Assembly (NCBI RefSeq): GCF_039654945.1
Contig: NW_027361690.1
Coordinates: 63,302,001-63,366,000 of the forward strand
Source: Dendrobates tinctorius
Taxonomy: Eukaryota
Length of the DNA stretch: 64,000 nt
Direction of reading: 5' to 3'
The notes beneath the pieces are model-generated. The model ran no database searches. It had not been told where the DNA came from and saw nothing but the letters and a program-made list of their open reading frames with translations. The position numbers were made by a program, and so were the translations under genes. Of this stretch, positions 19,993 to 62,944 are shown in pieces (position 1 is the stretch's first letter; each line of letters begins with the position of its first letter).

Positions 19993-22765
19993 CACTACTC
20001 TTGATGTCATTGGAATCACTGAAACTTGGTGGGACAATACACATGATTGGAATACAAGACTAGAAGGATACAACTTATTTGCAAGAAACAGACTTGATAA
20101 ACGAGGAGGGGGTGTCGCATTGTATGTTCGAAACGCGTATATCTGCACAGAGATTGAAGCTTCAGAGACTGGGAGTTCTGTGGAAACTGTTTGGGTAAGA
20201 ATACAAGGACAGAACAATGGAAAGGACACCATTGTAGGCATTTACTACAGGCCGCCTGTGCAAGCCGAAGATATAGATGAACTCTTTATGCATCAGATGG
20301 CCAAGTTCTCCAAAAAATATGACATAGTTGTCATGGGAGATTTCAACTATCCAGACATTTGTTGGGAATCTCTCTCAGGCAAAACTAACAGGTCAAGGAA
20401 ATTCTTATCCTCTCTTGCTGACAACTTTATCTTCCAAAAGGTAAGGGAGAAAACAAGGGGAACTGCTACCTTGGATCTAATCCTTATAAACAGGGAGGAA
20501 ATGGTTGAGGAGGTAAAAGTGGCTGGGACCCTAGGAGGTAGCGACCATGCTATTTTAGAATTTTGGATAACTAGAGGTGGAAGACCTGTGAAGACTCAGA
20601 CGTCAAGGTTAGATTTCAGAAAGGCAGATTTTAAGGGATTCAGAAAGAGAATTGGAGGGATCCAATGGCTGGATATCCTTAAAGACAAAAATGTCCAGGA
20701 AGGATGGGAAATCTTGAAAAATGAAATTCTCAAAGCACAGTTGTTAACAATTCCGAAAAGAGGGAAGAATAGGAAGCATTTAAGGAAACCAGGATGGATG
20801 AACACAGAACTTAAGCACATGCTAAAAAGGAAGAAAAAAATGTTTATAAAATGGAAAGAGGGAGGCATATCTAAAGAAGAATATAATGCTGTCTGCAGAA
20901 CCTGCAGGGCACAAATCAGAATATCTAAAGCTGAAAATGAACTGAGGCTTGCAAGAGATGTCAAAAGCAATAATAAAGGATTTTGGGGATATGTCAAAAG
21001 TAAAAGAAAAGTCAAAGATGCTATAGGATTTTTACAGGATGAAAATGATGAAATGGTAAGACAGGATGTTGAGAAGGCTGAACTTTTAAATTCCTATTTT
21101 GCATCTGTTTTCTCTCAGAAAGGAAATGCAACATCAACTGTTATTCACTGTCCTATTAAGGGAATAGAAGAATCCAGGATATCTATAAACAGAAAGATAG
21201 TGAGGAAACACTTAGCTAACCTAAATGAATTCAAGTCTCCAGGTCCAGATGAATTACACCCCAGAGTACTGAAGGAGATAGCAGAAGAAATTTTTGAACC
21301 CCTCTCCATAATCTTTGAAAATTCTTGGAGAACAGGAGAAGTGCCAGAAGACTGGAGAAGAGCAAATGTTGTTCCTATCTTCAAAAAGGGGAAGAAGGTG
21401 GACCCAGGCAACTATAGGCCGGTGAGTCTGACTTCTATACCAGGAAAGATCTTTGAACAAATTATTAAACAACATGTATGTCAATACCTGGATAAGAATG
21501 AAGTGATTAAACAGAGTCAGCATGGGTTTGTAACTAATAAGTCATGTCAGACTAACTTAATTTCCTTCTATGACGGTATCACTGATTGGGTGGATCAAGG
21601 AAATGCTGTAGATATAGTATATCTTGACTTCAGCAAAGCATTTGACAAAGTCTCTCATACAATCCTTATTGAAAAAATGACTAAGTATGGAATGGACAAG
21701 GCAACTGTTAGGTGGATTCATAACTGGCTTAGTGATCGGACCCAAAGAGTGGTCGTAAATGGCTGCACATCCAGTTAGAAGAATGTCTCAAGTGGGGTAC
21801 CACAGGGCTCTGTCCTGGGCCCTGTATTGTTCAACATCTTTATCAACGATTTAGATGAAGGAATTGAGGGTAAACTGATTAAATTTGCTGATGACACAAA
21901 GCTAGGAGGGATAGCTAATACTAGAGAAGAGAGAGAGAGGATTCAAAAAGATTTAAATAAACTGGAGAAGTGGGCAGCAACTAACAGAATGGTTTTTAAC
22001 AGGGAGAAATGCAAAGTACTACATCTGGGCAATAAAAATGAAAAAAGCATATATAGAATGGGAGGAATAGGGCTAAGTGACAGCACATGTGAAAAAGACT
22101 TGGGTATACTAATAGATCACAGACTGAATATGAGTCAACAGTGTGATGTAGCAGCAAAAAAGGCAAATGCAATTCTAGGATGTATTAACAGAAGCATACA
22201 GTCTAGATCACGTGAAGTCATTATTTCCCTCTACTCCTCTTTGGTCAGACCTCATCTGGAATATTGTGTCCAGTTTTGGGCACCACATTTTAAAAAAGAC
22301 ATCAACAAACTGGAGCAAGTTCAGAAAAGAGCAACCAGAATGGTGACCGGTCTGCAAACCCTGTCTTATGAGGAAAGATTGCAGGATTTGGGAATGTTTA
22401 GTTTGCAAAAGAGAAGACTGAGAGGAGACTTAATAGCTGTCTACAAATATCTAAAGGGCTGTCACATTGTAGAAGGATCAACTTTATTCTCATTTGCACA
22501 AGGAAAGACTAGAAGCAATGGGATGAAACTGAATGGGAAGAGACTCAGATTAGATATTAGAAAAAACTTTTTGACAGTTAGAGTGATCAATGAGTGGAAC
22601 AGGCTGCCATGAGAAGTGGTGAGTTCTCCTTCAATGGAAGTCTTCAAACAGAGGCTGCACAGACATCTGACTGGGATGATTTAGCGAATCCTGCTTTGAG
22701 CAGGGGGTTGGACCAGATGGCCCAGGAGGTCCCTTCCGATTCTATGATTCTATGATTCTATGATT
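19993..22765 (+). mobile_element. CR1 LINE, near-complete ORF2 (APE endonuclease plus RT), 5'-truncated
   Basis: ITETWW, GDFN, SDH, FADD motifs. 20120-21778 and 21827-22612 are in the same frame, split by one TAG. (ATTCTATG)n tail. Confidence 0.97.
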
Positions 22766-23028: not shown

Positions 23029-23453
23029 GAGGCTCCACGGACTTTATTTGTGCATTCATATTTCCCAGGGAGCATTGCACCTAGGATTTCACTGATTGAG
23101 CGCCTTTGCTTTCTGCCGCAGTGTTTTCTTTGACTGGTCTCCCTGAGGTCAGTGATTGTTTCGTGATTTTGGTCTACTAGGCATTGCACCCACCTAGCCA
23201 GAATCCTACTCCACACTGATGAGGGGCAACACCCCGAAACAGCTGTCTGTGGATGGATACCTGGCCTTGGTATTTGCCTTGTCATATCTGTAAACTCGTA
23301 AAGAGCTGGATATTGACTTAAAGGGCCACTTAATATGGTGGTAATGGTGGTTTCCGAAAGGAGCCACCCCTTGGCTGGGTCCTTCCCTGGAGGAAGATCT
23401 GGCTAGTCCCGTTTTTGAGACTCTCAAATGAGGCTCCACGGACTTTATTTGTG
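23029..23453 (+). mobile_element. Retrozyme-like 401-nt unit with 24-bp terminal redundancy
   Basis: gaggctccacggactttatttgtg at 23029-52 and 23430-53; central canonical HHR; homologous to the 352-nt unit at 27867-28502. Confidence 0.75.
23210..23253 (+). ncRNA. Canonical minimal type I hammerhead ribozyme
   Basis: UCCACA-CUGAUGA-GGGG CAACA CCCC-GAAAC AGCU GUC|UGUGGA. Predicted cleavage after 23247. Confidence 0.93.
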
Positions 23454-24280
23454 TACCTCATATTGAAAGAACACATACTGAAAATAACAAATGATATACA
23501 TCAACTAAGAAAAATACATTAAATAAAGCCCAATATACTGTAGGTGAGTAATATATATTTGCTAGGTGGATGAATGGTGAACCATTCGGAAAAACACAGG
23601 GAACCAAGAGAGGATGTACCAAACCTGAGGTCCAAAGAAGAAGGTGTGGGACGAATGATGCAAGGATAAAAGTACCTTTATTAAACAAGAATGGTAAATG
23701 GTAGCACTGCATGCAAAGAAGTGCCCGCACTTGAATGAAAAACAATGATAAATAAACACGATAAAAAATAAATATTTATAAATGATGGATTATTCAAAAA
23801 CTAAAAACCCCTAGACCACTGAATGAAGATAGGGTATTCCAAGTAAGTGATAAGCCATATAATGACATTAGATGAATATTACAGTGAGTAGTAGGTGGTG
23901 ATAAACCCCCCCAAAAAATCATATGCATACATTGCCTGAAGCAAAAAAAGGGAGCAAAGATGTGGACAATGAAAGAGTGCCTCATGAGACATGATGAGTG
24001 TCAATCAAGTAAGTGACTGAGTAAGGATGAAAGACAAAAAAGGAGACCAAAGGTGTAAAAAGTGGAGCTACAATGCGGGTTAAAAAAATCATCCAGTAAA
24101 TATTGTTCACTGACCTTTTGAATGTGTATAGTGACAGCATTATATTGTTGGTTTTAAGTTCGTATTTTTGTACTGTTTAAAGATTTTTAATGTGTGCTGG
24201 TGTGAAAAATCTGAACCATGTGATGGAGGACGGGGTTTTTTGAATCCTTGGTCAATATAAAACCCTGACTCACTGGTATA

Positions 24281-25006: not shown

Positions 25007-27866
25007 CTCTATCCACTGAGGTTCAAGTGCAGCGCACACCCCGACATGCATTTCAGAACATATCCTTCCTCAAGGTTCCTCATATTGAGTAAAGAAGCAT
25101 GGCTACATCCTAAATTGTAAATGGAAAAAGACCTAACACGCTAACACTCCATTTAACCCATATTGCTCTACAACCTCCGTTGTGAACAGGTAATTGAAGT
25201 AGGTTATCTGATGGAGAGAAGACATGAAATATGTACAAGAGGCTGGGAGGTGACACTTTTTACACTTTTTCTCTCCTGTGTAGACATGGCTTCCTATGTT
25301 CACAAGAATTAAAGGCAAACAGGACGGTAGCTGTTCAGTTATGAATATTTTTTTTTTGTGACCGGTGTATGTCTTATATTTATGGGAGACATATTTACTT
25401 ACAATACATTACTGTGTTGTCTATCTATACAAAGCTAAAATCATGATAAGAAATATGGCATTGATATCTCCCGTCTGGGACCTCTGGAGGACAGATATCT
25501 TTAAGTTCGAGGATCTTATAATTTTTGGTGCCTAAGTCATATCCCAACTATCAGCCACGATCTGAGGTCACCAAGCGGAGTGGCTTGAATCTGCTAAAAA
25601 CAGATTCTGAATTAATGCCAAGGATGATAGGGGATACAGCTTGTTGTAGGACTGCACCCATTTCCTACTTGGAGCACTCCCCTCCACAATAATCTATGTT
25701 ATTCTTGCAACATCAGGTCTAGTAAAGTTGTTTTGTTTAGTCTATTTTATTTTTATGCTATTATATACACTGTATGGTCTTGTCCCCTTTGTAATATCTT
25801 TTGCAAATGATCCCTATTTTTTAAATTAAATACATAAAGTTTAATAGCATTGTTCCTATAGCTCTATAAACAACACCCATGAAACTTTCCTTCATAACAG
25901 GCCAATTTTTTCAATTCTGACCAGTTTCAGTTTATGAAGTAATAACTCTGAAACGCTTAAACATATCCCACTGAGACTGTTTTTTTTTTAAACATATTGT
26001 ACTTCATTATAGTAGTAAAATTTGTTCGATATAACATGCTTTTATTTCTGAAAATATTGGAAATTTGGCCAAAATTTTGAAATGTTTGCAATTTTTTTTG
26101 TCAGGAAGTTAGAAGGGTTAAAAGGTGATCAGACAGTTTCTAATTTTTCCATAAAATAAGCAAAACCATTTCTTATGGTCCACCTCACATTTGAAGTGAC
26201 TTTAAGGGGCCTATATGACCGAAAATACCCAAAGGTGACACCATTCTAAAACTGCACCCCTCAAGGTGCTCAAAACCACATTCAAGAAGTTTATTAACCT
26301 TTCAGGTGCTTCACAGGGAATAATGCAATGTGGAATGAAATAAAAATAAAATGTAATGTTTTCCCACAAAAATAGGATTGCGGATACCATGTCATATTTG
26401 AAGAGCCCCTGACATGCCCAAACAGCAGAAACATCCACAAGTGGTCTATTTTGTAAACTACACCTCTTAGGCGGGAACACCCCTGCAGCTGGGGCTGCAC
26501 AGAGTGGATCCAGAAAAGCCACATGATGGGTAAGAAACCAAGGGTATGGGATGGTTTCATATGTACAGGGCTCTTTGATCTAAGCATGTAGTTTTTTGCA
26601 TTTGCCTTACCTTCCACCCTATATCTGTTGTTATCCCCTATTAGCATGATTATTATGCACTATACACTTTATTATATGATGGATGTGGTAATTTCTGGTT
26701 GGCGCACCGTTTTTCTACCTGCTTCTCCTGCTGAACATGTAATTGCTACTATTGTTGTAGTTCTGCTTGATGATTCTTTTATTTAAAAGAATTTCAGATT
26801 TTCATGCAATAAATTTCTATCTTTTTAGTCATTTCTGCACTTGGACTCCTCTTTTTCTTTTTGGTTTAAGTACCCCATAAGTTGTTGAAAGCTACTCTTG
26901 AGGCACAGTGCACAGCTCAGAGAGGAAGCTATATTACAGTGCAGATTTTGCTGTGCTGGTTTGAGGGTGCCATGTCACATTGGCAGATCTCCTGGGGTTC
27001 CAGAACAGAAGAAAACCCCATATGTGACCCCATTTGCAAACTACTCATCTCAATGAATTCATCTAGGGGTGCAGTGATCATATTAACACCATAGGTAGGT
27101 CACAAAATTTTATACCATTTGGCAGTGAAGAATAAATAATTATATTTTCACCACAAAAAAATTGTTTTAGCAACAGATTACATTTTCACACAGGAAAATG
27201 GGTATAAATTGTGCTAAAATGTGTCACACAATTTCTACTGAATGTGGCAATAGCCCATATGTGGATGTACAGTACTGCTTAGCCACACAGCGGGACTTGG
27301 GAGGGAAAGTGTTCTATTTGTCTGTTGGAGAACAAATTATTGTAGAATAGTATGCGGTCTTGATACACAAAGCCCCTAAATGCCAGAAGTGCAGAATCCC
27401 CCCTTCATTGACCCCATTTTGGAAATTACACCCCTCTGGGAATTTATCTACAGGTGCAGTGACTATTTTGACTCCAGCTCATGCTTCTGGAGACATGCAC
27501 CCATAAATTAGGTGAGCTCTCATAGCTACAGAAATGTCAAACGTGTGGTTTAGGCACACTGTGTGGCTCCGATGGGAGTGGGGCATTTGGATTTGGGAGC
27601 CAAGAATTTGTTGGATTTCGAGTGCGAGAAGCTAGAGCATTTTTACAGAGCTTTTGTACTACCAGTAACTTGGGAGCCCCCTATCTTTCCATTAACAAAT
27701 GGAAAGGGCTGGCGGAACGCACCAAATATTAAAAGATGGTAATAAGGTGCGTTCGCAGCCCGGGGTCCACCGTGCAGAGGTGGTAAACTGCTGCTCAGTA
27801 ATGGCGGACGCTATATGGCGGTATAATAGAAAAACATACGTGGGTTAGCGTCACCCGGTGTGTATA

Positions 27867-28502
27867 TGAAGAGGAGGATGAATGAACTCATGGAGATCAA
27901 CATCCGACACTGCAGAGACACCATCACGTGTTTCTCAGCGCAGTGATTCTAGAGCACTGCCCCCATCCCTTATGGGAAATATGTAAAACATGCAAAACAG
28001 AAGCCGCCGAGACACCATCACGTGTTTCTCAACGCAAGCAATGACCAGCCAGGTCTTTGCCCGGGAAGGAACAACCACGGGAAGGGCAGTCTCCAATGAA
28101 GGAAACCACCTATACCAAAACATGGTATCCATCCACATACAGCTGTTTCGGGGTATTGCCCCTCATCAGTGTGGAGTAGGAAACTGGCTGGTAGGAGCAA
28201 TGCCTAGTAAAAAGACTATGAAGAGGAGGATGAATGAACTCATGGAGATCAACATCCGACACTGTGGAGACACCATCACGTGTTTCTCAACGCAGTGATT
28301 CTAGAGCACTGCCCCCATCCCTTATGGGAAATATGTAAAACTTGCAAAACAGAAGCCGCGGAGACACCATCACGTGTTTCTCAACGCAAGCAATGACCAG
28401 CCAGGTCTTTGCCCGGGAAGGAACAACCACAGGAAGGGCAGTCTCCATTGAAGGAAACCACCTATACCAAAACATGGTATCCATCCACATACAGCTGTTT
28501 CG
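27867..28502 (-). mobile_element. Non-LTR retrozyme-like tandem (352-nt unit, about 1.8 copies)
   Basis: Period 352 (27866 vs 28218); HHR in each unit; flanked by GGTGTGTATA at 27857-66 and 28503-12. Confidence 0.85.
28132..28175 (-). ncRNA. Canonical minimal type I hammerhead ribozyme
   Basis: Minus: UCCACA-CUGAUGA-GGGG CAAUA CCCC-GAAAC AGCU GUA|UGUGGA. A 3' half copy lies at 28484-28504. Confidence 0.93.
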
Positions 28503-30565
28503 GGTGTGTATAGGGGCGGACTCTGTTGCTTCACAGAGCCACACTACCCCAGAACATAAATGCCGGAGCCTGTTTAAAGCTCACAGACATTGGCAAAGGA
28601 GCGCACAGAATGCAGTCACAGAACTCTGCCCCAAGCACACGGGGTCAGAGTCCTGCTAGACCTTCTGGGCGCGTGGTGTCGCACCTGCGGATGCCACTAT
28701 AGACGCTGACTATGGTGGAGTGTCGAGCACGTGCACCGTGGCGTGCAGAGCCAGCGGTGGACACTGATGCCAGGCTCAGACTCTGCCTCTACCTACACCT
28801 ATGCCTGGGCGCTTAACAGGCTAGGCTGCACAACACATGTGTACCAAGGGTAGGGGTTTCTTAATGAATCATTCACCATGCATGCAACACTCACTCCTCA
28901 TAGTCTGGTAATGCAGTCTATACTAGCGCATGGCCGAGTGGCCATGCAAACCTTTTATAGCAGCGTCCTTCCGGGACCTTCCTGACCTTTCTGATGGTCC
29001 AATCCGAGCTGGAGAAGGACCAGAGCATGTGACCTCCGATCGTCCCACGGGCATGCTCAGTGGACCAAAAGGAGGACTTAGTCCCTGGAGTAGCTCGCTG
29101 CTGACCAGCATGCGTTGCTATAGCTGGACCAGAGGTAGCAGCAGCTACCAAACCCACAGAGCTGGTCTGAGCAGAGTGCCGGGATCGACGAGTCTACTGA
29201 GCAGCCTCCTCTGTGGCTGGAGAGGAATGGGAAACTGCCGAATGCATGGCTCGGGATTCCTGCTGTGCAGCAACAGGGACCTGATGCCTAACAAGACCTG
29301 AGTGGAGGTTGTTTTTGTGAATTGAGTTGAAGCTTTTATTGGGAACATTTAATATAAAATTTTGGATCACATTTATCAGGCACTCTAAGATGAGCACTTA
29401 CTTTGGGATTTCCATCTAAATCTCTGAGTGAGATGATTCATATGAAATCCCCAAGGGATATATTCTCTTTGATGAGGCAGCAGAATTACTCCTTGAATCC
29501 GTCTGGCCCCTGTTCAGTGGTTTCCTTCTTTTCAGAAGTGCACAAAACTGTGTTGGATCGCACTTTTATGTAAGCCTGAAAAGATGGACACCACAGGCTC
29601 ACAGGTCCTATGGCGTCAACAGTGTCTCCATCTGCCTTATTATAGAGAATCTTCCTCTAGAGGTTTCGTCTGAATCACGTATTTCAGAAATTTACATGGA
29701 CACCCCGATGTAAGCGCTCAGCACAGAGAGCTGGAAAATTTGTGAGCCAAGCCTTACTGCAATCTTTGGGAGGCAGAATGAACAAATCAACAGTGGTTTT
29801 ATTTATTTTTTACGCTGTTCCTCAGTAGAAATGATAAGACAACTTTATTCTTTGGGTCGGTGCGATTACAGCGATACCAGATTTATATCTTTTTTTTATG
29901 TTTGGCTGCTGTTAAAAAAAAAAAAAAAAAAGCAAAAAGCATTTTTTAATGTGTAACAAAAATAAGATTTTGCATCACCATAATTATACAGCTATAATTT
30001 TTCCACATTTTCTTCCAACAGAGTCATGTGAGGGCTTGTTTTTTGTGGGACAAGTTGATATTTTTTTGGTACCATTTTCAAGCACATGATTTTTTTTAAT
30101 CAGTTTTATTTACATTTTTGTGAGACAGACTAAACTAAACAAAAACCAGCAATTTGGGAATAGTGTTTTTTTTTTTATTGCCATTCCGCATGTGGCAAAA
30201 TTGATAAAGCAGCTTTATTCTTCAGGTCAGTACTATTACAGAGATAGCACATTTTTATAGTTTTTTTTAGGTTTTGCCACTTTTGCACAATAAAAACTAT
30301 TTTGCAGGAAAAAAGAATTTTTTTTTAATCGTTTTATTCTGAAAGCTATAACTTTTTTATTTTTCCACTGCTTGAGTCGTATGGCAGCTTGTTTTTTGTG
30401 GGACAAGATGTTTTCATCGGTACCATTTTTACTTCCATTTAACTTTTGATTGCGCTTTATTCCACTTTTTGTTCGGCGGTATGATGAAAAAGCAAAGTGT
30501 TTTGCTACGTTCTTTTTTTTTTTTTTTTACAGTGTGCACAAAAGGAGTTAACTAGTGGGATAGCC

Positions 30566-43459: not shown

Positions 43460-45295
43460 TTCTGAGCTGTGTATCTAACCCTATCCTTTGTGATAAAGTC
43501 TGCTGAGCTGTGTACCTAATCCTCTCCTGTGTGATACTTTCTGCTGAGCTGTGTATTTAATCCTATAGTATTACTGACTGCTCAGCCGTGTATCTAATCC
43601 TCTCCTGTGTGATACTGACTGCTGAGCTGTGTATCTAATCCTATCCTGTATGATTCTGACTACTGAGCAGTGTATCTAATCCTATCCTGTGGATACTATT
43701 GAGGAGAAATAGCGCAATACTGCATTATCCAGTGTAGGTATATCAATTTAAAAATAGTACACTTACCAGATGAAGCTTGTAATAAGCATGGAGGATTCGC
43801 TGATGCAGGAACCACAGATCCACGAGGGACCGACATAGAAGATGCAGGATAGGAAAAAAGTGATCAGACAATCCGCGCTGCGAATCACTATAAACAATTA
43901 TTATTACAGTGGTCTTTATTCGACACGTTTCAAAGTTTCACAGAACTTCTTCCTCAGGAAGGAGGTCCTCAGGAGTTTTTCCTGAGGAAGGAGTTCTGTG
44001 AAACTTCGAAACGCGTCGAATAAAGACCACTAATAATAATTGTTTATAGTGATTCGTAACACGGATTGTCTGACCACTTTTTTCCTATCTTGCATAATCC
44101 TATCCTGTGTGATACCATCTGCTGAGTCGTGTATCTAACCCTATCCTGTGTGATACTGACTGCTGAGCCGTGTATCTAATCCTATACTGTGTGATACTGA
44201 CTGCTGAACCGTGTATTTAATCCTATCCTGTGTGATACTGTCTGCTGAGCTGTGTATCTAATCCTATACTGTGTGATACCGTCTGCTGAGCCATATATCT
44301 AACCCTATCCTGTGTGATACTGTGTGCTGAGCTGTGTATCTAATCTTATCCTGTGTGATACTGTCTGCTGAGCCATGTATCTATTCCTACCCTGTGTGAT
44401 ACTGACTGCTGAGCTGTGTATCTAATCCTATCCTGTGTGATACTGACTGCTGAGCCGTGTATCTAATCCTATCCTGTGTGATACCATCTGCTGAGCCATG
44501 TATCTAACCCTATCCTGTGTGATACTGACTGCTGAGCCGTGTATCTAATCCTATCCTGTGTGATACTGTCTGCTGAGCTGTGTATCTTATCCTATACTGT
44601 GTGATACCGTCTGCTGAGCCATATATCTAACCCTATCCTGTGTGATACTGACTGCTGAGCCGTGTATCTAACCCTATCCTGTGGGATACTGTGTGCTGAG
44701 CTGTGTATCTAATCCTATCCTGTGTGATACTGTCTGCTGAGCCATGTATCTATTCCAACCCTGTGTGATACTGACTGCTGAGCTGTGTATCTAATCCTAT
44801 CCTGTGTGATACTGACTGCTGAGCTGTGTATCTAATCCTATCCTGTGTGATACCATCTGCTGAGCCGCGTATCTAACCCTATCCTGTGTGATACTGACTG
44901 CTGAGCTGTGTATCTAACCCTATCCTGTGTGATACTGCGTGCTGAGCTGTGTATCTAATCTTATCCTGTGTGATACTGTCTGCTGAGCCATGTATCTATT
45001 CCTATCCTGTGTGATAATGACTGCTGAGCTGCGTATCTAATCCTATCCTGTGTGATACTGTCTGCTCAGCCGTGTATCTAATCCTATCCTGCTTGATACC
45101 GTCCGCTGAGCCATGGATCTATTCCTATCCTGTGTGATACTGACTGCTGAGCTGTGTATCTAATCCTATCCTGTGTGATACTGACTGCTGAGCCATGTGT
45201 CTAATCCTCTCTTGTGTGATACTAACTGCTGAGCTGTGTATCTAATCCTGTGTGATACTGACTGCTGAGCTGTGTATCTAATCCTATCCTTTTTG
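43460..45295. repeat. 41-bp minisatellite within the Helitron
   Basis: Unit tgctgagctgtgtatctaatcctatcctgtgtgatactg(t/a)c; interrupted at 43698-44095. Confidence 0.95.
43979..44020 (+). ncRNA. Minimal hammerhead ribozyme with a mirror copy on minus at 43919-43960
   Basis: UUC-CUGAGGA-A-GGAGUU CUGUGA AACUUC-GAAAC GC GUC|GAA. Predicted cleavage after 44017. Confidence 0.8.
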
Positions 45296-57555: not shown

Positions 57556-60500
57556 TGTGACGTCCGCCTGTGGGTCTGGGCTGCAGCCAGGCAACACCCC
57601 GAGAAACACTGATACCCTTTACCCCTATACAGGGATCTGGATTTATAGCAGAGCCCAGGAGGCGCTGTCTGAATAGGAGCAGTGACCAGAGCAGGACGGT
57701 CGCCAGAAAGGTGTTCCAATACGGGACACAAACGTGGAGATATGCAAGTCTAAACCAGTCGGGCAGCAATGGTACAAAATACGGTAGACAGAAGCAGAGT
57801 CAGATTCAGGCCAAGAGTCATAAACCAGGAGAGTAGCAGAGGTACAGAATCGTTAGGCAGAAGCAGAGTCAGATTCAGGCCAAAAGTCATAAACCAGGAG
57901 AGTAGCAGAGGTACAGAATCATTAGGCAGAAAGAGAGTCAGAAGTCCAGGCCAAAGTCAGTCAGTCAGTCAGTCATAAAGTAATTCACACAGTAACACAC
58001 AGGGGAACCAAGAATATATCCGGCGGCTTGCAAGACCAGTCCCAAGGTATTTCAGGGATCAGGTCACCCCTCATAGGTTCCTGTACTGATGATGTCATCA
58101 GTACCGCCCCCAGGACCAGGCCAGATGGAGATGCAGTAACCTCTTGATGACTGACAGAGGGGTGGAGCCTGCGTCCACCAGATGCCTGCGCCGGTGCCCT
58201 TACTCTGTCAGCACCATAACTCCCGGGCGAGCCATGGCACCTCCTAGTGACCGCGACAGGAGCAGCAGACCCAGAATTTAACGGCGACGTGACAGACCGG
58301 CGCCTCCTAGAGGCTAAAGCCGAGACAGTAGGCTCTGAGCCTGACGTGACAGAACCACGGCCCCTTCCAGTGGCCGAGGCAGGAACAGCCGTCCCTGAGT
58401 CTGACGATAAAGTGGCGGTCCGGAGCCTCCTAGTCTCCGCGACCGGAACAGCAGGCCCTAAGTCTGGCGGAAACGTGACAGTACCCCCCCTCCAAGAGGG
58501 GCCTCCGGACCCTCAAAACCCGGTTTATCAGGGTGAAGGAGGTGAAACCTTCTAATCAACCCCTTGGCATGAATGTCACTAGCGGGGACCCAGGACCTCT
58601 CCTCTGGGCCATAGCCTTTCCAATGAACTAAATATTGCACAGACTTTCTCACTAAACAGGAATCAAGGATGCCCTGGACTTCGTACTCCAAGGCACCCTT
58701 GACCAAAACTGGAGGAGGAGGGGACTGGGCAGGATGAATTGGGGAGCGGTACACCTTGAGAAGGGATTTGTGGAAAACATTAGGAATTTTAAAAGACTGA
58801 GGGAGCCTTAAACGAAAGGCTACCGGGTAAATTACATCTAATATCTCGTAGGGACCAATAAACCTGGGCCCCAGTTGGGCAGATGGCACCTTAAGCTTTA
58901 TGTTTCTGGTAGACAGCCAAACTTTGTCCCCAACTCCTAGGTGCGGCCCCGTGGACCTCCGTTTATTTGCGGCCAAAGCCTGCCTGACCTGGGACCCTTT
59001 CAAGTTTGTGTTCACCTCCGACCAGATTGTCCTTAAGTGACGTATGGAATTCTCCACTCCCGGAAGCTCCGACATCTTGGCCGAAAATGAACCAAAACGT
59101 GGGTGCAAACCATGATTGCAGAAGAACGGGGTGGTTTTGATAGATTCCTGGTACTGGTTATTTAGAGCGAACTCAGCTAATGGGAGATGTTCCGCCCAAT
59201 CAGACTGATGTTCCGAGACATAGCAGCGAAGATATTGCTCTAGAGCCTGGTTGGTACGCTCCGTTTGACCATTGGTCTCAGGGTGGTAAGCGGAGGAGAA
59301 GGATAATTCAATACCAATACGTTTGCAGAATGCTCTCCAGAATTTGGAAACAAACTGGGTACCTCGGTCGGACACGATATTCTCTGGAGTGCCATGCAGC
59401 CTTATTACATGAACAATAAACAACTTACTCAGAGTTTCTGAATTAGGTAATCCAGAGAGGGGAACGAAATGACATTGCTTACTGAACCTGTCCACCACCA
59501 CCCAGATACATGTCTTCCCCTCTGAGGGTGGTAGGTCAGTAATGAAGTCCATGGAGATGTGGGTCCATGGACTCTCTGGAGCGGGCAAGGACTGGAGCCA
59601 GCCGGCAGGCCGATTGTGAGGGGACTTGGCGCGAGCACAGATTTCACAAGCTAGTACATAATCCTTGCAGTCCTTAACTACCATTGGCCACCAAAAACTC
59701 CTAGTCACAAGTCTGGCGGTATTATTGACCCCAGGATGGCCTGCCAGGACGGAGTCGTGCGACTCCTTCAGAACTTGTAGGCGAAACGGCGCTGGAACAA
59801 ACAATTTCTGGGGGGGCGTCGAGTCAGGGGCTGGTTCTGGGGACCTACGGATCTCCTCCAGAAGGTCCAGAGACACAGCCGACACAACAATACCATTGGC
59901 CAGTATTGGAACTGGCTCCGAGTCCTCAGCCTGTGAGGGGCAGAAACTTCGAGAGAGAGCATCAGCCCTCACATTTTTGGTACCAGGACGAAAGGTTATT
60001 AAGAAATCAAACCTAGAGAAGAACAAGGCCCACCTCGCTTGTCTAGGATTTAATCTTTTAGCTGACTCCAGGTAAGTCAGATTCTTGTGATCTGTAATCA
60101 CAGTGATCTTATGTTTGGCGCCTTCGAGGAAGTGGCGCCATTCCTCGAAGGCCCATTTGATCGCCAATAACTCCCGATTACCTATATCGTAATTCTTCTC
60201 AGTGGCAGAGAATTTGCGGGAGAAAAAGGCACATGGGCGAAGCTGAGTGAGTGATGCAGTGCCTTGCGACAGCACTGCTCCCACTCCGACCTCAGAGGCG
60301 TCCACCTCTACAATAAACGGGCGGTCCAGATCAGGCTGAACCAAAACTGGGTTGGCTACAAAGCACTCTTTTAACGTAGCAAAAGCCTGAATTGCCTCAG
60401 GGTTCCAATTGGTCACGTCTGCCCCTTTTCGGGTCAAATCCGTGAGTGGTTTAGCAATTTCGGAGAAACCCCTGATGAATTTTCGGTAATAATTTGCAAA

Positions 60501-62944
60501 CCCTAAAAATCGCTGCAGCGCTTTTAGCGACTTGGGTTGCACCCAAGTTTTAATAGGTTGGATCTTGGCAGGATCCATACGGAAGCCTGTGCTTGAAACC
60601 ACATATCCTAAAAATTGTACCTCCTCCGCAAAAAAAACACATTTCTCCAGTTTAGCAAACAGGGAGTGTTCTCGCAGTCTCTGCAGTACAGAGCGAACGT
60701 GCTGAGCATGTGTCACAGGGTCAGCAGAATAAATCAAAATGTCATCTAAATACACGACGACATACACCCCACAAATGTCCCTGAAAATGTCATTTACAAA
60801 GTGCTGGAACACGGCAGGTGCGTTACTGAGTCCGAAGGGCATTACCAAAGTACTCAAAGTGGCCAAGAGGGGTATTAAAGGCTGTTTTCCACTCATCCCC
60901 GTCTCTTATGCGGACTAGATTGTATGCCCCCCGGAGGTCCAGTTTAGTAAACCAACGGGCTCCCATTAGCTGATTAAAAAGATCAGGGATGAGTGGAAGC
61001 GGATACTGGTTCTTTATAGTGATTGCATTCAATTCCCGGTAATCAATGCAGGGTCTGAGACCACCATCTTTCTTTTCTACAAAGAAGAAGCCAGCTCCAA
61101 CTGGTGAAATGGACGGTCTAATAAACCCCTTTTTTAAGCTATCAGCTATGTACTCGTTCATAGCCTGACGCTCTGGACCTGAGAGATTAAATATTCTCCC
61201 TTTTGGGAGACGGGCATCTGGAATCAGATCTATAGGGCAATCATACTTTCTGTGAGGGGGTAGCTTTTCAGATTTTGCAATAGAAAAGACATCCTCAAAA
61301 TCTCTGAAGGCAAACGGTATGTGGAGGGGTTTAACTTTAACTTGGTTTACTGTTAGCGATATGCAGTTTTCCTGACAGTGTGAACTCCAGCGTATAACAT
61401 CGCCTAGGTGCCAGTCGATGACTGGATTATGCTGGCGTAGCCATGGCATTCCCAAAATGACTGCAGCAGACAAATTATCCATCACAAAAAATGACATAAC
61501 CTCGGTATGCAGTGCTCCCACCAACATAGTGATTTTGTCAGTAACAAATTTAACCCCCTCCTGGACAATAGATGTGCCATTAATAGCCGTAGTTTTTATA
61601 GGGGCATTAAGTCTTAATAGGGGTACACCGAGACTTTTAGCAACCAAAGAATCCATAAAATTCCCTTCAGATCCACAATCCACATATGCGTTCACACACT
61701 GAGATTTCTGACCAAAAGAAAGGGCAATAGGCAATAAAACTTTAGCCGCATCTGCGGGCAATACCTGTGCCCCTGGGCAACCATAGCCAGAGTTGCCCAG
61801 AGGCCGATGTCTCAGTAGTATGGATCTCTGACGCTCAGCTCTCTCTCTGAAGGCTCCAGACTGCAGCATACTGGTGCAGGAAGATGAAAGTGCTCCTTCA
61901 GGCTGTGCACTGAACCAGGTGTTTAGGCCAGAAATCAGCTCAGTCAGAAGAAGGGAGAGAAAAAAAAAGTTCAGGGAGACTGCTTTTGTATATGCTGGAT
62001 ATATACACAAGAAGCAGTTTTTTTTTATGTGGCCAGATATAATGTGACGTCCGCCTGCGGGTCTGGGCTGCAGCCAGGCAACACCCCGAGAAACACTGAT
62101 ACCCTTTACCCCTATACAGGGATCTGGATTTATAGCAGAGCCCAGGAGGCGCTGTCTGAATAGGAGCAGTGAACAGAGCAGGACGGTCGCCAGAAAGGTG
62201 TTCCAATACGGGACACAAACGTGGAGATATGCGAGTCTAAACCAGTCGGGCAGCAATGGTACAAAAACGGTAGACAGAAGCAGAGTCAGATTCAGGCCAA
62301 GAGTCATAAACCAGGAGAGTAGCAGAGGTACAGAATCGTTAGGCAGAAGCAGAGTCAGATTCAGGCCAAAAGTCATAAACCAGGAGAGTAGCAGAGGTAC
62401 AGAATCGTTAGGCAGAAGGAGAGTCAGAAGTCCAGGCCAAAGTCAGTCAGAAAGTAATACACACAGGGGAACCAAGAATATATCCGGCGGCTTGCAAGAC
62501 CAGTCCCAAGGTATTTCAGGGATCAGGTCACCCCTCATAGGTTCCTGTACTGATGATGTCATCAGTACCGCCCCCAGGACCAGGCCAGATGGAGATGCAG
62601 TAACCTCTTGATGACTGACAGAGGGGTGGAGCCTGCGTCCACCAGATGCCTGCGCCGGTGCCCTTACTCTGTCAGCACCATAACTCCCGGGCGAGCCATG
62701 GTGCCTCCTAGTGACCGCGACAGGAGCAGCAGACCCAGAATTTAATGGCGACGTGACAGACCGGCGCCTCCTAGAGGCTAAAGCTGGGACAGTAGGCTCT
62801 GAGCCTGACGTGACAGAATCACGGCCCCTTCCAGTGGCCGTGGCACGAACAGCCGTCCCTGAGTCTGACGATAAACTGGCGGTCCGGCGCCTCCTAGTGG
62901 CCGCGACCGGAACAGCAGGCCCTAAGTCTGGCGGAAACGTGACA
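57556..62944 (-). mobile_element. Gypsy chromovirus (Tf1/sushi-like) LTR retrotransposon lacking gag
   Basis: LTRs at 57556-58480 and 62043-62944 (TGT..ACA), TSD GGACT, PPT at 58484-58493. Confidence 0.97.
58458..61790 (-). pseudogene. pol: pol: protease, RT, RNase H, integrase, chromodomain; one frameshift near 60850
   Basis: [51 protein letters not shown]. Confidence 0.95.

What the first reader, a model, noticed from the sequence alone, without database searches (positions are those of the whole stretch)
27857..28512. Retrozyme-like tandem: 352-nt hammerhead unit inserted as a 1.8-mer with a TSD
Seen: a non-coding 352-bp unit, near-identical between copies, with a canonical minimal type I HHR on minus (palindromic ACAGCUGU stem III) and a flanking GGTGTGTATA duplication. 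The two GUA cleavage sites (28490 and 28138) are exactly one unit apart. Known: newt satellite 2 and metazoan non-LTR retrozymes have this layout and produce small circular RNAs. Inferred: a young, non-integer-length cDNA copy of a circular RNA, inserted by target-primed reverse transcription. I do not recognise this family and cannot confirm it is new.
Basis: partly seen in the sequence, partly recalled or inferred. Interest (0 to 1): 0.9.

Follow-up and report, generated by a model that had tools for sequence, protein, structure and literature searches.

The report
Frog hammerhead retrozyme insertion, truncated dimer
This is one reverse-transcribed insertion (1.8 head-to-tail units of 352 bases) of a very abundant, non-coding frog repeat carrying a small self-cutting hammerhead RNA motif, a kind of element already described in salamanders and clawed frogs, so it is real but ordinary.

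Summary
A 352-bp unit lies as 1.82 tandem copies (27865-28216 full, 28217-28504 partial, 97.6% identical). It is flanked by an exact 10-bp duplication at 27857-27866 and 28503-28512. The minus strand carries one complete type I hammerhead (28124-28183, cut after 28138). A second one is truncated inside helix II but keeps its cut site (after 28490). Contigs from a DNA run show copies of the surrounding host repeat with one target copy and no insert, so this is a true insertion.

The unit is a very high-copy family in this frog and in a second species label. The family majority has GUC at the cut site; this copy has GUA at both sites. The layout, a 5'-truncated copy ahead of a full copy with a variable-length duplication and no poly(A), is the published Penelope-type insertion pattern. 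It matches metazoan "non-LTR retrozymes".

RNA circles and self-cleavage are untested. Rfam does not recognise the motif; a descriptor scan and compensatory changes in related hammerheads support it.

The scan has already noted this 352/353-nt family elsewhere in this genome. Verdict: a new member of a known kind, of low interest.

The parts
27857..27866 (.). Target-site duplication, left copy (GGTGTGTATA). Its last 2 nt (TA) also fit the unit (microhomology).
   Evidence: Empty-site paralogues of the host repeat carry one copy only (joints 27828->28513 and 27831->28515).
27865..28216 (-). Full-length 352-nt unit (downstream copy in RNA sense). Its low-coordinate end is the 3' end of the inserted cDNA template. 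No poly(A).
   Evidence: No Pfam-bearing ORF.
28124..28183 (-). Complete type I hammerhead. Helix I UCCACA/UGUGGA, core CUGAUGA, helix II GGGG/CCCC with loop CAAUA, GAAA, helix III AC-AGCU-GU, and GUA with cleavage after 28138.
   Evidence: Below Rfam thresholds.
28217..28504 (-). 5'-truncated 288-nt unit (upstream copy in RNA sense), 97.6% identical to the full copy.
28476..28504 (-). Hammerhead remnant: CCC-GAAAC-AGCU-GUA|UGUGGA-UGGA. It keeps the substrate strand and the cut site (after 28490). It lacks helix I 5' strand, CUGAUGA and the 5' half of helix II.
   Evidence: Cofolding shows it can pair with the complete copy as half of a double hammerhead.
28503..28512 (.). Target-site duplication, right copy (GGTGTGTATA). 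Its first 2 nt (GG) also fit the unit.
27912..28036 (.). Internal about 30-nt direct repeat inside each unit (27912-27942 and 28006-28036; again at 28264-28294 and 28358-28388).
28112..28209 (-). About 98-nt hammerhead module shared at 89% identity with a second, otherwise unrelated 401-nt family at 23175-23273 (+).
   Evidence: In one search, loose ends at 28209 continue as 401-family sequence.

Best explanation
This is a dead, ORF-less insertion of an abundant 352-nt 'non-LTR retrozyme', a non-autonomous hammerhead-bearing retroelement.

The RNA sense is the minus strand. A reverse transcriptase primed at a nicked target started at the element's 3' end (window side 27865). It copied one whole unit, ran on through a hammerhead cleavage site into a second unit, and stopped 288 nt into it, inside helix II. 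Second-strand repair left a 10-bp target duplication.

The product, a 5'-truncated copy in front of a full copy with no poly(A) and a variable-length duplication, is the signature of Penelope-like element (PLE) integration. The enzyme was therefore most likely a PLE RT/GIY-YIG endonuclease acting in trans (inferred).

In the family's life cycle, multimeric transcripts fold into double hammerheads through the palindrome ACAGCUGU. They cut themselves into 352-nt monomers, which a host ligase may circularise (inferred from axolotl and newt work).

At this locus only the upstream cut site can be given a complete double-hammerhead core. This copy is therefore probably a poor source of monomers.
For: Shown:
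- 1.82 tandem units at 97.6% identity.
- An exact 10-bp flank duplication that is unique in the window.
- DNA-run contigs that join the two flanks with a single target copy and no insert (joints 27828->28513 and 27831->28515 with 34-37 intervening letters ending in the target motif).
- The unit's summed word depth is 10-100 times that of its flanks, with about 15,900 contigs laid in run X1. The unit is also present under a second species label, X20.
- A complete hammerhead under a strict descriptor: 2 hits against 0.023 expected.
- Helix I is kept through compensatory changes, and a palindromic helix III is kept, in related hammerheads from two lake-metagenome tandem repeats.
- The 352-nt monomer folds better than all 200 shuffles, z = -3.9.
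- The homodimer folds as a textbook double hammerhead, and the two ACAGCUGU boxes pair in the fold of the 640-nt locus RNA.
- No ORF with a Pfam match.

From papers:
- PLE insertions are 5'-truncated partial tandems with variable TSDs (PMC8557442).
- PLE RT starts internally on its RNA (PMC11167929).
- Metazoan retrozymes are 150-450-bp tandem units with type I hammerheads, below 50% GC and with TSDs over 4 bp (PMC7229834).
- Xenopus retrozyme families are sisters of PLE pLTRs (10.64898/2026.07.22.740005).
Against: No PLE coding sequence lies in this window. I could not compare the unit's 3' end with any PLE of this genome, so the mobilising enzyme is inferred from architecture and literature alone.

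The optional PLE marks, a 30-40-bp tail or an inverted 5' copy, are absent here.

Rfam does not recognise the hammerhead.

Self-cleavage, transcription and circles are untested. The one run guessed to be RNA (X15) shows the unit enriched over its flanks, but contig depths cannot separate RNA from DNA carry-over.
Confidence: 0.8

Rival explanations
1. The template was a covalently closed 352-nt circular RNA, copied by rolling-circle reverse transcription for 1.8 rounds. This is a sub-case of the best explanation, not exclusive of PLE enzymes.
For: The cDNA crosses two cleavage sites without a break, and its length is not a whole number of units. Where the family majority is known, each difference between the two copies is private to one copy. 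One CpG decayed separately in each copy (CA against TG). This fits two copies that were identical at insertion. Axolotl units of 331 and 353 nt exist as circles (PMC7229834). PLE RT initiates internally, so it could use a circle (PMC11167929).
Against: An uncleaved multimeric transcript, or template switching between linear RNAs, gives the same product. Autonomous PLEs of several kb form the same partial tandems without being known to circularise (PMC8557442). There is no circle evidence for this frog, and the hammerhead is weak as a monomer.
Confidence: 0.35
2. It was mobilised by a LINE (APE-type endonuclease plus RT), like a SINE.
For: An APE+RT LINE lies 5 kb away (20120-22612). A 10-bp TSD is also compatible with LINE TPRT.
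Against: There is no poly(A) or microsatellite 3' tail. Head-to-tail partial dimers are not a LINE/SINE pattern. No similarity to the LINE was found by blastn within the window.
Confidence: 0.07
3. It is a fragment of a tandem satellite moved or left behind by DNA-level events (unequal exchange, segmental duplication, deletion), not a retro-insertion.
For: Hammerhead satellites in long arrays exist in newts and axolotl. The family is extremely abundant.
Against: The boundaries are clean, with an exact 10-bp duplication. Paralogous host-repeat copies have one target and no insert.
Confidence: 0.03

Closest known systems
Axolotl non-LTR retrozymes Rtz_331 / Rtz_353 with HHR_Amex1/2 (Cervera & de la Pena 2020, PMC7229834), and newt satellite 2
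   Same: Amphibian host. Unit of about 350 nt, non-coding, below 50% GC. Type I hammerhead with 6-bp helix I, 4-bp helix II and a 2-bp helix III capped by a tetraloop (as in HHR_Amex2). Expected to work as a dimer. The monomer RNA is highly self-paired.
   Different: Sequence homology to the axolotl or newt units was not tested, as no sequences were at hand. Helix II here is a perfect GGGG/CCCC, without the U-U mismatch of Amex2. Here it is a dispersed 1.8-mer with a TSD rather than a long array. Circles and cleavage were shown there and are untested here.
Xenopus non-LTR retrozyme families related to PLE pLTRs (Li, Clavereau & Pollet 2026, bioRxiv 10.64898/2026.07.22.740005)
   Same: Frog host. 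Families of monomers, dimers and multimers averaging about 316 bp in Amphibia, non-autonomous, and co-occurring with PLEs. One primer for an X. laevis 'Penelope-6_XT' retrozyme begins with the same 10 nt as the helix I region here. This is a weak hint only.
   Different: By the scan's own notes, which I did not verify, this genome is a dendrobatid poison frog. That genus is not named in the paper's text. Family-level identity with any of the 57 Xenopus families could not be tested, because the consensus sequences are not held.
Penelope-like element insertion architecture (Craig et al. 2021, PMC8557442; Frangieh et al. 2024, PMC11167929)
   Same: A 5'-truncated copy precedes a full copy, the TSD is of variable length, there is no poly(A), and a hammerhead sits in the repeated part.
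   Different: No RT/GIY-YIG ORF. The tandem period equals the whole 352-nt element. The hammerhead is canonical rather than the minimal PLE variant. No tail and no inverted arm at this copy.

Membership tests
Metazoan non-LTR retrozyme (PMC7229834) | Type I hammerhead with the conserved core (CUGAUGA, GAAA, NUH) and helices I-III | tested here: met
   All core positions are present, with H17 = A. Helix I 6 bp, helix II 4 bp, helix III 2 bp plus a palindromic loop.
Metazoan non-LTR retrozyme (PMC7229834) | Hammerhead sits in short head-to-tail repeats of 150-450 bp | tested here: met
   352-bp period, 1.82 copies. Only one of the two hammerheads is complete.
Metazoan non-LTR retrozyme (PMC7229834) | Non-coding, below 50% GC, no LTR/PBS/PPT | tested here: met
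   GC 48.6%. ORFs are 105 aa at most and have no Pfam match. The repeats are tandem, not terminal. PBS and PPT were not specifically searched.
Metazoan non-LTR retrozyme (PMC7229834) | TSD longer than 4 bp when present | tested here: met
   10-bp exact duplication, plus empty-site paralogues.
Metazoan non-LTR retrozyme (PMC7229834) | Transcribed, self-cleaved, and accumulating as circular RNA | tested here: inconclusive
   Only Logan contigs of runs guessed to be RNA were available. The unit is enriched over its flanks in X15, but this cannot be separated from DNA. Cleavage needs a bench test.
Penelope-type (PLE-dependent) insertion | Partial tandem: a 5'-truncated copy upstream of a full copy, with a variable TSD | tested here: met
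   288-nt truncated copy plus 352-nt full copy in RNA sense, with a 10-bp TSD.
Penelope-type (PLE-dependent) insertion | 30-40-bp tail or inverted 5' arm (optional features) | tested here: not met
   The TSD abuts the unit directly on both sides. No inverted arm was found.
Penelope-type (PLE-dependent) insertion | 3'-end similarity to an autonomous PLE or pLTR of the same genome | not testable with these tools
   No PLE coding sequence in the window. The rest of the genome cannot be reached.
Rfam Hammerhead_1 / Hammerhead_3 (clan CL00010) | Score at or above the gathering threshold | tested here: not met
   No hit at gathering score. The best hit is 16 bits against 48.5 for Hammerhead_3, in a wrong register.

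The most novel reading that the evidence does not exclude
The about 100-nt hammerhead module behaves as a portable cassette. It is shared at 89% identity by two frog families whose remaining 250-300 nt are unrelated (352-nt and 401-nt units). Its core, helix II, loop 2 and loop 1 flanks recur almost unchanged in 600-nt tandem units of an unknown lake organism. That would point to recombination between retrozyme RNAs, or horizontal spread of the ribozyme module, as a driver of new families. In addition, 5'-truncated copies like this one would act as substrate-only halves of double hammerheads.
Probability: 0.25. Interest if true: 0.4.

Novelty: new member of a known kind. Interest (0 to 1): 0.2.

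Why it matters
It adds a clean, well-delimited example to the growing evidence that animal hammerhead repeats are non-autonomous retroelements spread by reverse transcription. It has a TSD, empty sites, and a truncation point inside the ribozyme.

The cDNA crossed two intact cleavage sites. This shows that the template was not a cleaved linear monomer.

For this genome it is mainly an annotation matter. The family should be masked and named as a retrozyme-type repeat.

Tried and rejected
- Tandem Repeats Finder found nothing. The copy number is too low for its score, so this is not evidence against the repeat.
- Rfam, at gathering and at permissive thresholds, gave no credible hammerhead hit.
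- A search for a PLE or other coding partner in the window found only an APE+RT LINE and a Ty3/gypsy pol. Fourteen other ORFs had no Pfam match.
- A search for an in-window paralogue of the host repeat, to align an empty site directly, found none. I relied on the joint letters instead.
- The exact 36-nt hammerhead pattern had 0 hits in JGI metagenomes. A shorter core pattern gave two lake contigs with related hammerheads but unrelated units. No further copies of the frog family could be fetched. The test of fixed against permuted 3' ends therefore could not be run. The only hint is heterogeneous loose ends in 20 X1 contigs just before 27874, which suggests that other copies end at the same place.
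- MAFFT misplaced the helix III length difference, so I parsed the six hammerheads by anchors in a script.
- The supplement of the Xenopus preprint holds only primers, and none matches the unit beyond 10 nt.
- Species identity (dyeing poison frog) comes from the scan's notes and was not verified.
Full report
WHAT IS THERE. Reading the sequence and three repeat analyses confirm a 352-bp period. Copy 1 is 27865-28216. Copy 2 is 28217-28504 (288 nt). They differ at 7 columns, giving 97.6% identity. Tandem Repeats Finder reported nothing, which reflects the low copy number. GGTGTGTATA occurs only twice in the 64-kb window, at 27857 and 28503, touching the repeat on each side. Two nt at each junction (TA on the left, GG on the right) fit both the duplication and the unit. 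A flank repeat of 10 nt or more arose in 100 of 20,000 random boundary pairs 640 nt apart in this repeat-rich window.

THE RIBOZYME. On the minus strand, 28183 to 28124 reads CCUAC / UCCACA / CUGAUGA / GGGG-CAAUA-CCCC / GAA-AC-AGCU-GU-A | UGUGGA / UGGA. All hammerhead core positions are present. Helix I has 6 bp and helix II has 4 bp. Helix III has 2 bp capped by the palindromic loop AGCU, so ACAGCUGU is self-complementary. H17 is A, and cleavage falls after 28138.

A strict descriptor finds this motif and one more (23216, + strand) in the window. Random windows of the same composition give 0.023 hits each. Rfam does not support the motif. There is nothing at gathering score, and the only permissive hit is a mis-registered 16-bit Hammerhead_3 match.

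Independent support comes from relatives. Two lake-metagenome contigs with 626- and 599-bp tandem periods carry hammerheads with the same core, helix II, loop 2 (CAAnA) and flanking CCUAC...UGGA. Their helix I sequences differ (GCCUAA/UUAGGU and ACUUCA/UGGAGU) yet still form six pairs. Their helix III palindrome is shorter (ACCGGU). These compensatory changes argue for a selected fold.

In the terms of Cervera & de la Pena (PMC4209133), this is the 'canonical metazoan type I' hammerhead, not the helix-III-less min-HHR of Penelope elements.

The element's high-coordinate end (28504) lies inside the 3' strand of helix II. Only CCC-GAAAC-AGCU-GUA|UGUGGA remains there, with its cut site after 28490, exactly 352 nt from the other.

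IT IS AN INSERTION. I laid Logan contigs of four runs on 27400-28950. The flanks are themselves a repeat. DNA-run contigs of other copies of that host repeat join 27828 to 28513 and 27831 to 28515. The 34-37 intervening letters are diverged versions of the left flank and end in a single copy of the target motif (...CCCAGTGTGTAC...CGGTGGATACAGA). These are empty sites. Together with the exact 10-bp duplication, they show a discrete insertion and exclude a satellite remnant.

THE FAMILY. In the DNA run X1 the unit's summed word depth is 1e5-9e5, against 4e3-2.5e5 for the flanks. About 15,900 contigs were laid. Runs under a second species label (X20) hold the family too.

The family majority differs from this copy at several places. 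At 28138 most contigs read G on the plus strand, so the family consensus site is GUC. This copy has GUA at both sites, so its template already carried GUA. Core positions of the hammerhead are not among the listed variable places, though 38 rows were not shown.

Loose ends at 28209 continue as the sequence of the second family in this window. That family is the 401-nt unit at 23029-23464. It shares only a ~98-nt hammerhead module at 89% identity. Within the 60-nt ribozyme, the two families differ only in loop 2 and at H17.

The scan's earlier notes list the same 352/353-nt family elsewhere in this genome and call the host a frog, the dyeing poison frog. I did not verify the species.

AGE. The 7 mismatch columns between the copies include 27913-14 CA against 28265-66 TG. 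That is one CpG decayed separately in each copy. Another is a CpG-to-CpA change at 28431. Where one search shows the family majority (28265, 28342), one copy keeps it. The two copies were thus probably identical when inserted and have each drifted about 1.2% since. The insert is not brand new.

MECHANISM. Shown: the insert is a head-to-tail 1.8-mer of a non-coding unit. ORFs are 105 aa at most and have no Pfam match. It has a TSD and no poly(A), and it is continuous across two cleavage sites. The template was therefore not a hammerhead-cleaved linear monomer.

Inferred: the RNA sense is the minus strand. Reverse transcription began at the 27865 side and ended prematurely at 28504. A 5'-truncated copy preceding a full copy, with a variable-length TSD, is the published Penelope-like architecture (PMC8557442). 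Penelope RT initiates internally on its RNA (PMC11167929). Animal retrozymes have been argued to be non-autonomous PLE derivatives (10.64898/2026.07.22.740005).

I therefore favour PLE-type target-primed reverse transcription in trans. No PLE gene lies in this window; only an APE+RT LINE and a gypsy pol are present. A head-to-head pair of PLE-style minimal hammerheads does lie at 43928-44011.

FOLDING PREDICTIONS. The 352-nt monomer (28489 to 28138) folds at -122 kcal/mol as a circle. Shuffles give -101 +/- 5.5, so z = -3.9 and 0 of 200 shuffles do as well. 66% of bases are paired.

Two complete hammerhead segments cofold into the classical double hammerhead, with an 8-bp intermolecular helix III and swapped helix I strands. 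The energy is -48.5, against 2 x -21.3 for the two monomers.

In the fold of the whole 640-nt locus RNA, the two ACAGCUGU boxes pair with each other. The truncated copy supplies a substrate strand to the core of the complete copy. The site after 28490 therefore gets a full active site. The site after 28138 can rely only on the weak monomeric form. This copy is thus probably a poor producer of monomers. This is a prediction and has not been tested.

COMPARISON AND VERDICT. The element meets every testable criterion of metazoan non-LTR retrozymes (PMC7229834). The untested criteria are RNA circles and cleavage. It resembles axolotl Rtz_353/HHR_Amex2 in unit size and helix III, and it resembles the Xenopus families in host and dispersal.

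I found no paper on hammerhead repeats in poison frogs, and that genus is not named in the Xenopus preprint. Interest is low because the kind is published and the scan has already met this family repeatedly.

Noticed in passing
window 23029-23464 (+): A second hammerhead element. The unit is about 401 nt and its first 24-35 nt are repeated at its end. It has a GUC site after 23247. It shares only a ~98-nt hammerhead module (89%) with the 352-nt family, and it lies about 400 nt downstream of an APE+RT LINE ORF pair (20120-22612).
   Followed up: partly
window 43928-44011: A head-to-head pair of Penelope-style minimal hammerheads (CUGAGGA core, 6-bp helix II, GAAAC-GCGUC) on opposite strands, 25 nt apart. 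It looks like a fold-back PLE-type insertion.
   Followed up: no
L001 1-1157 and L002 1-1133 (JGI contigs TBL_comb48_EPIDRAFT_1067204 and _1068898): Lake-metagenome contigs made of 626-bp and 599-bp tandem units, about 42% GC. Each unit has a type I hammerhead nearly identical in core, helix II and loop 2 to the frog motif, but with covarying helix I. These are retrozyme-like repeats of an unknown eukaryote.
   Followed up: partly
window 27700-27864 and 28513-28950: The host sequence of the insertion is itself a high-copy repeat (word depth up to 2.4e5 in run X1), of unknown class. A different ~385-bp diverged direct repeat lies at 27012-27476.
   Followed up: no
window 58458-62376 (-): Ty3/gypsy-type pol with long open frames (protease, RT, RNase H, integrase, chromodomain).
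   Followed up: no
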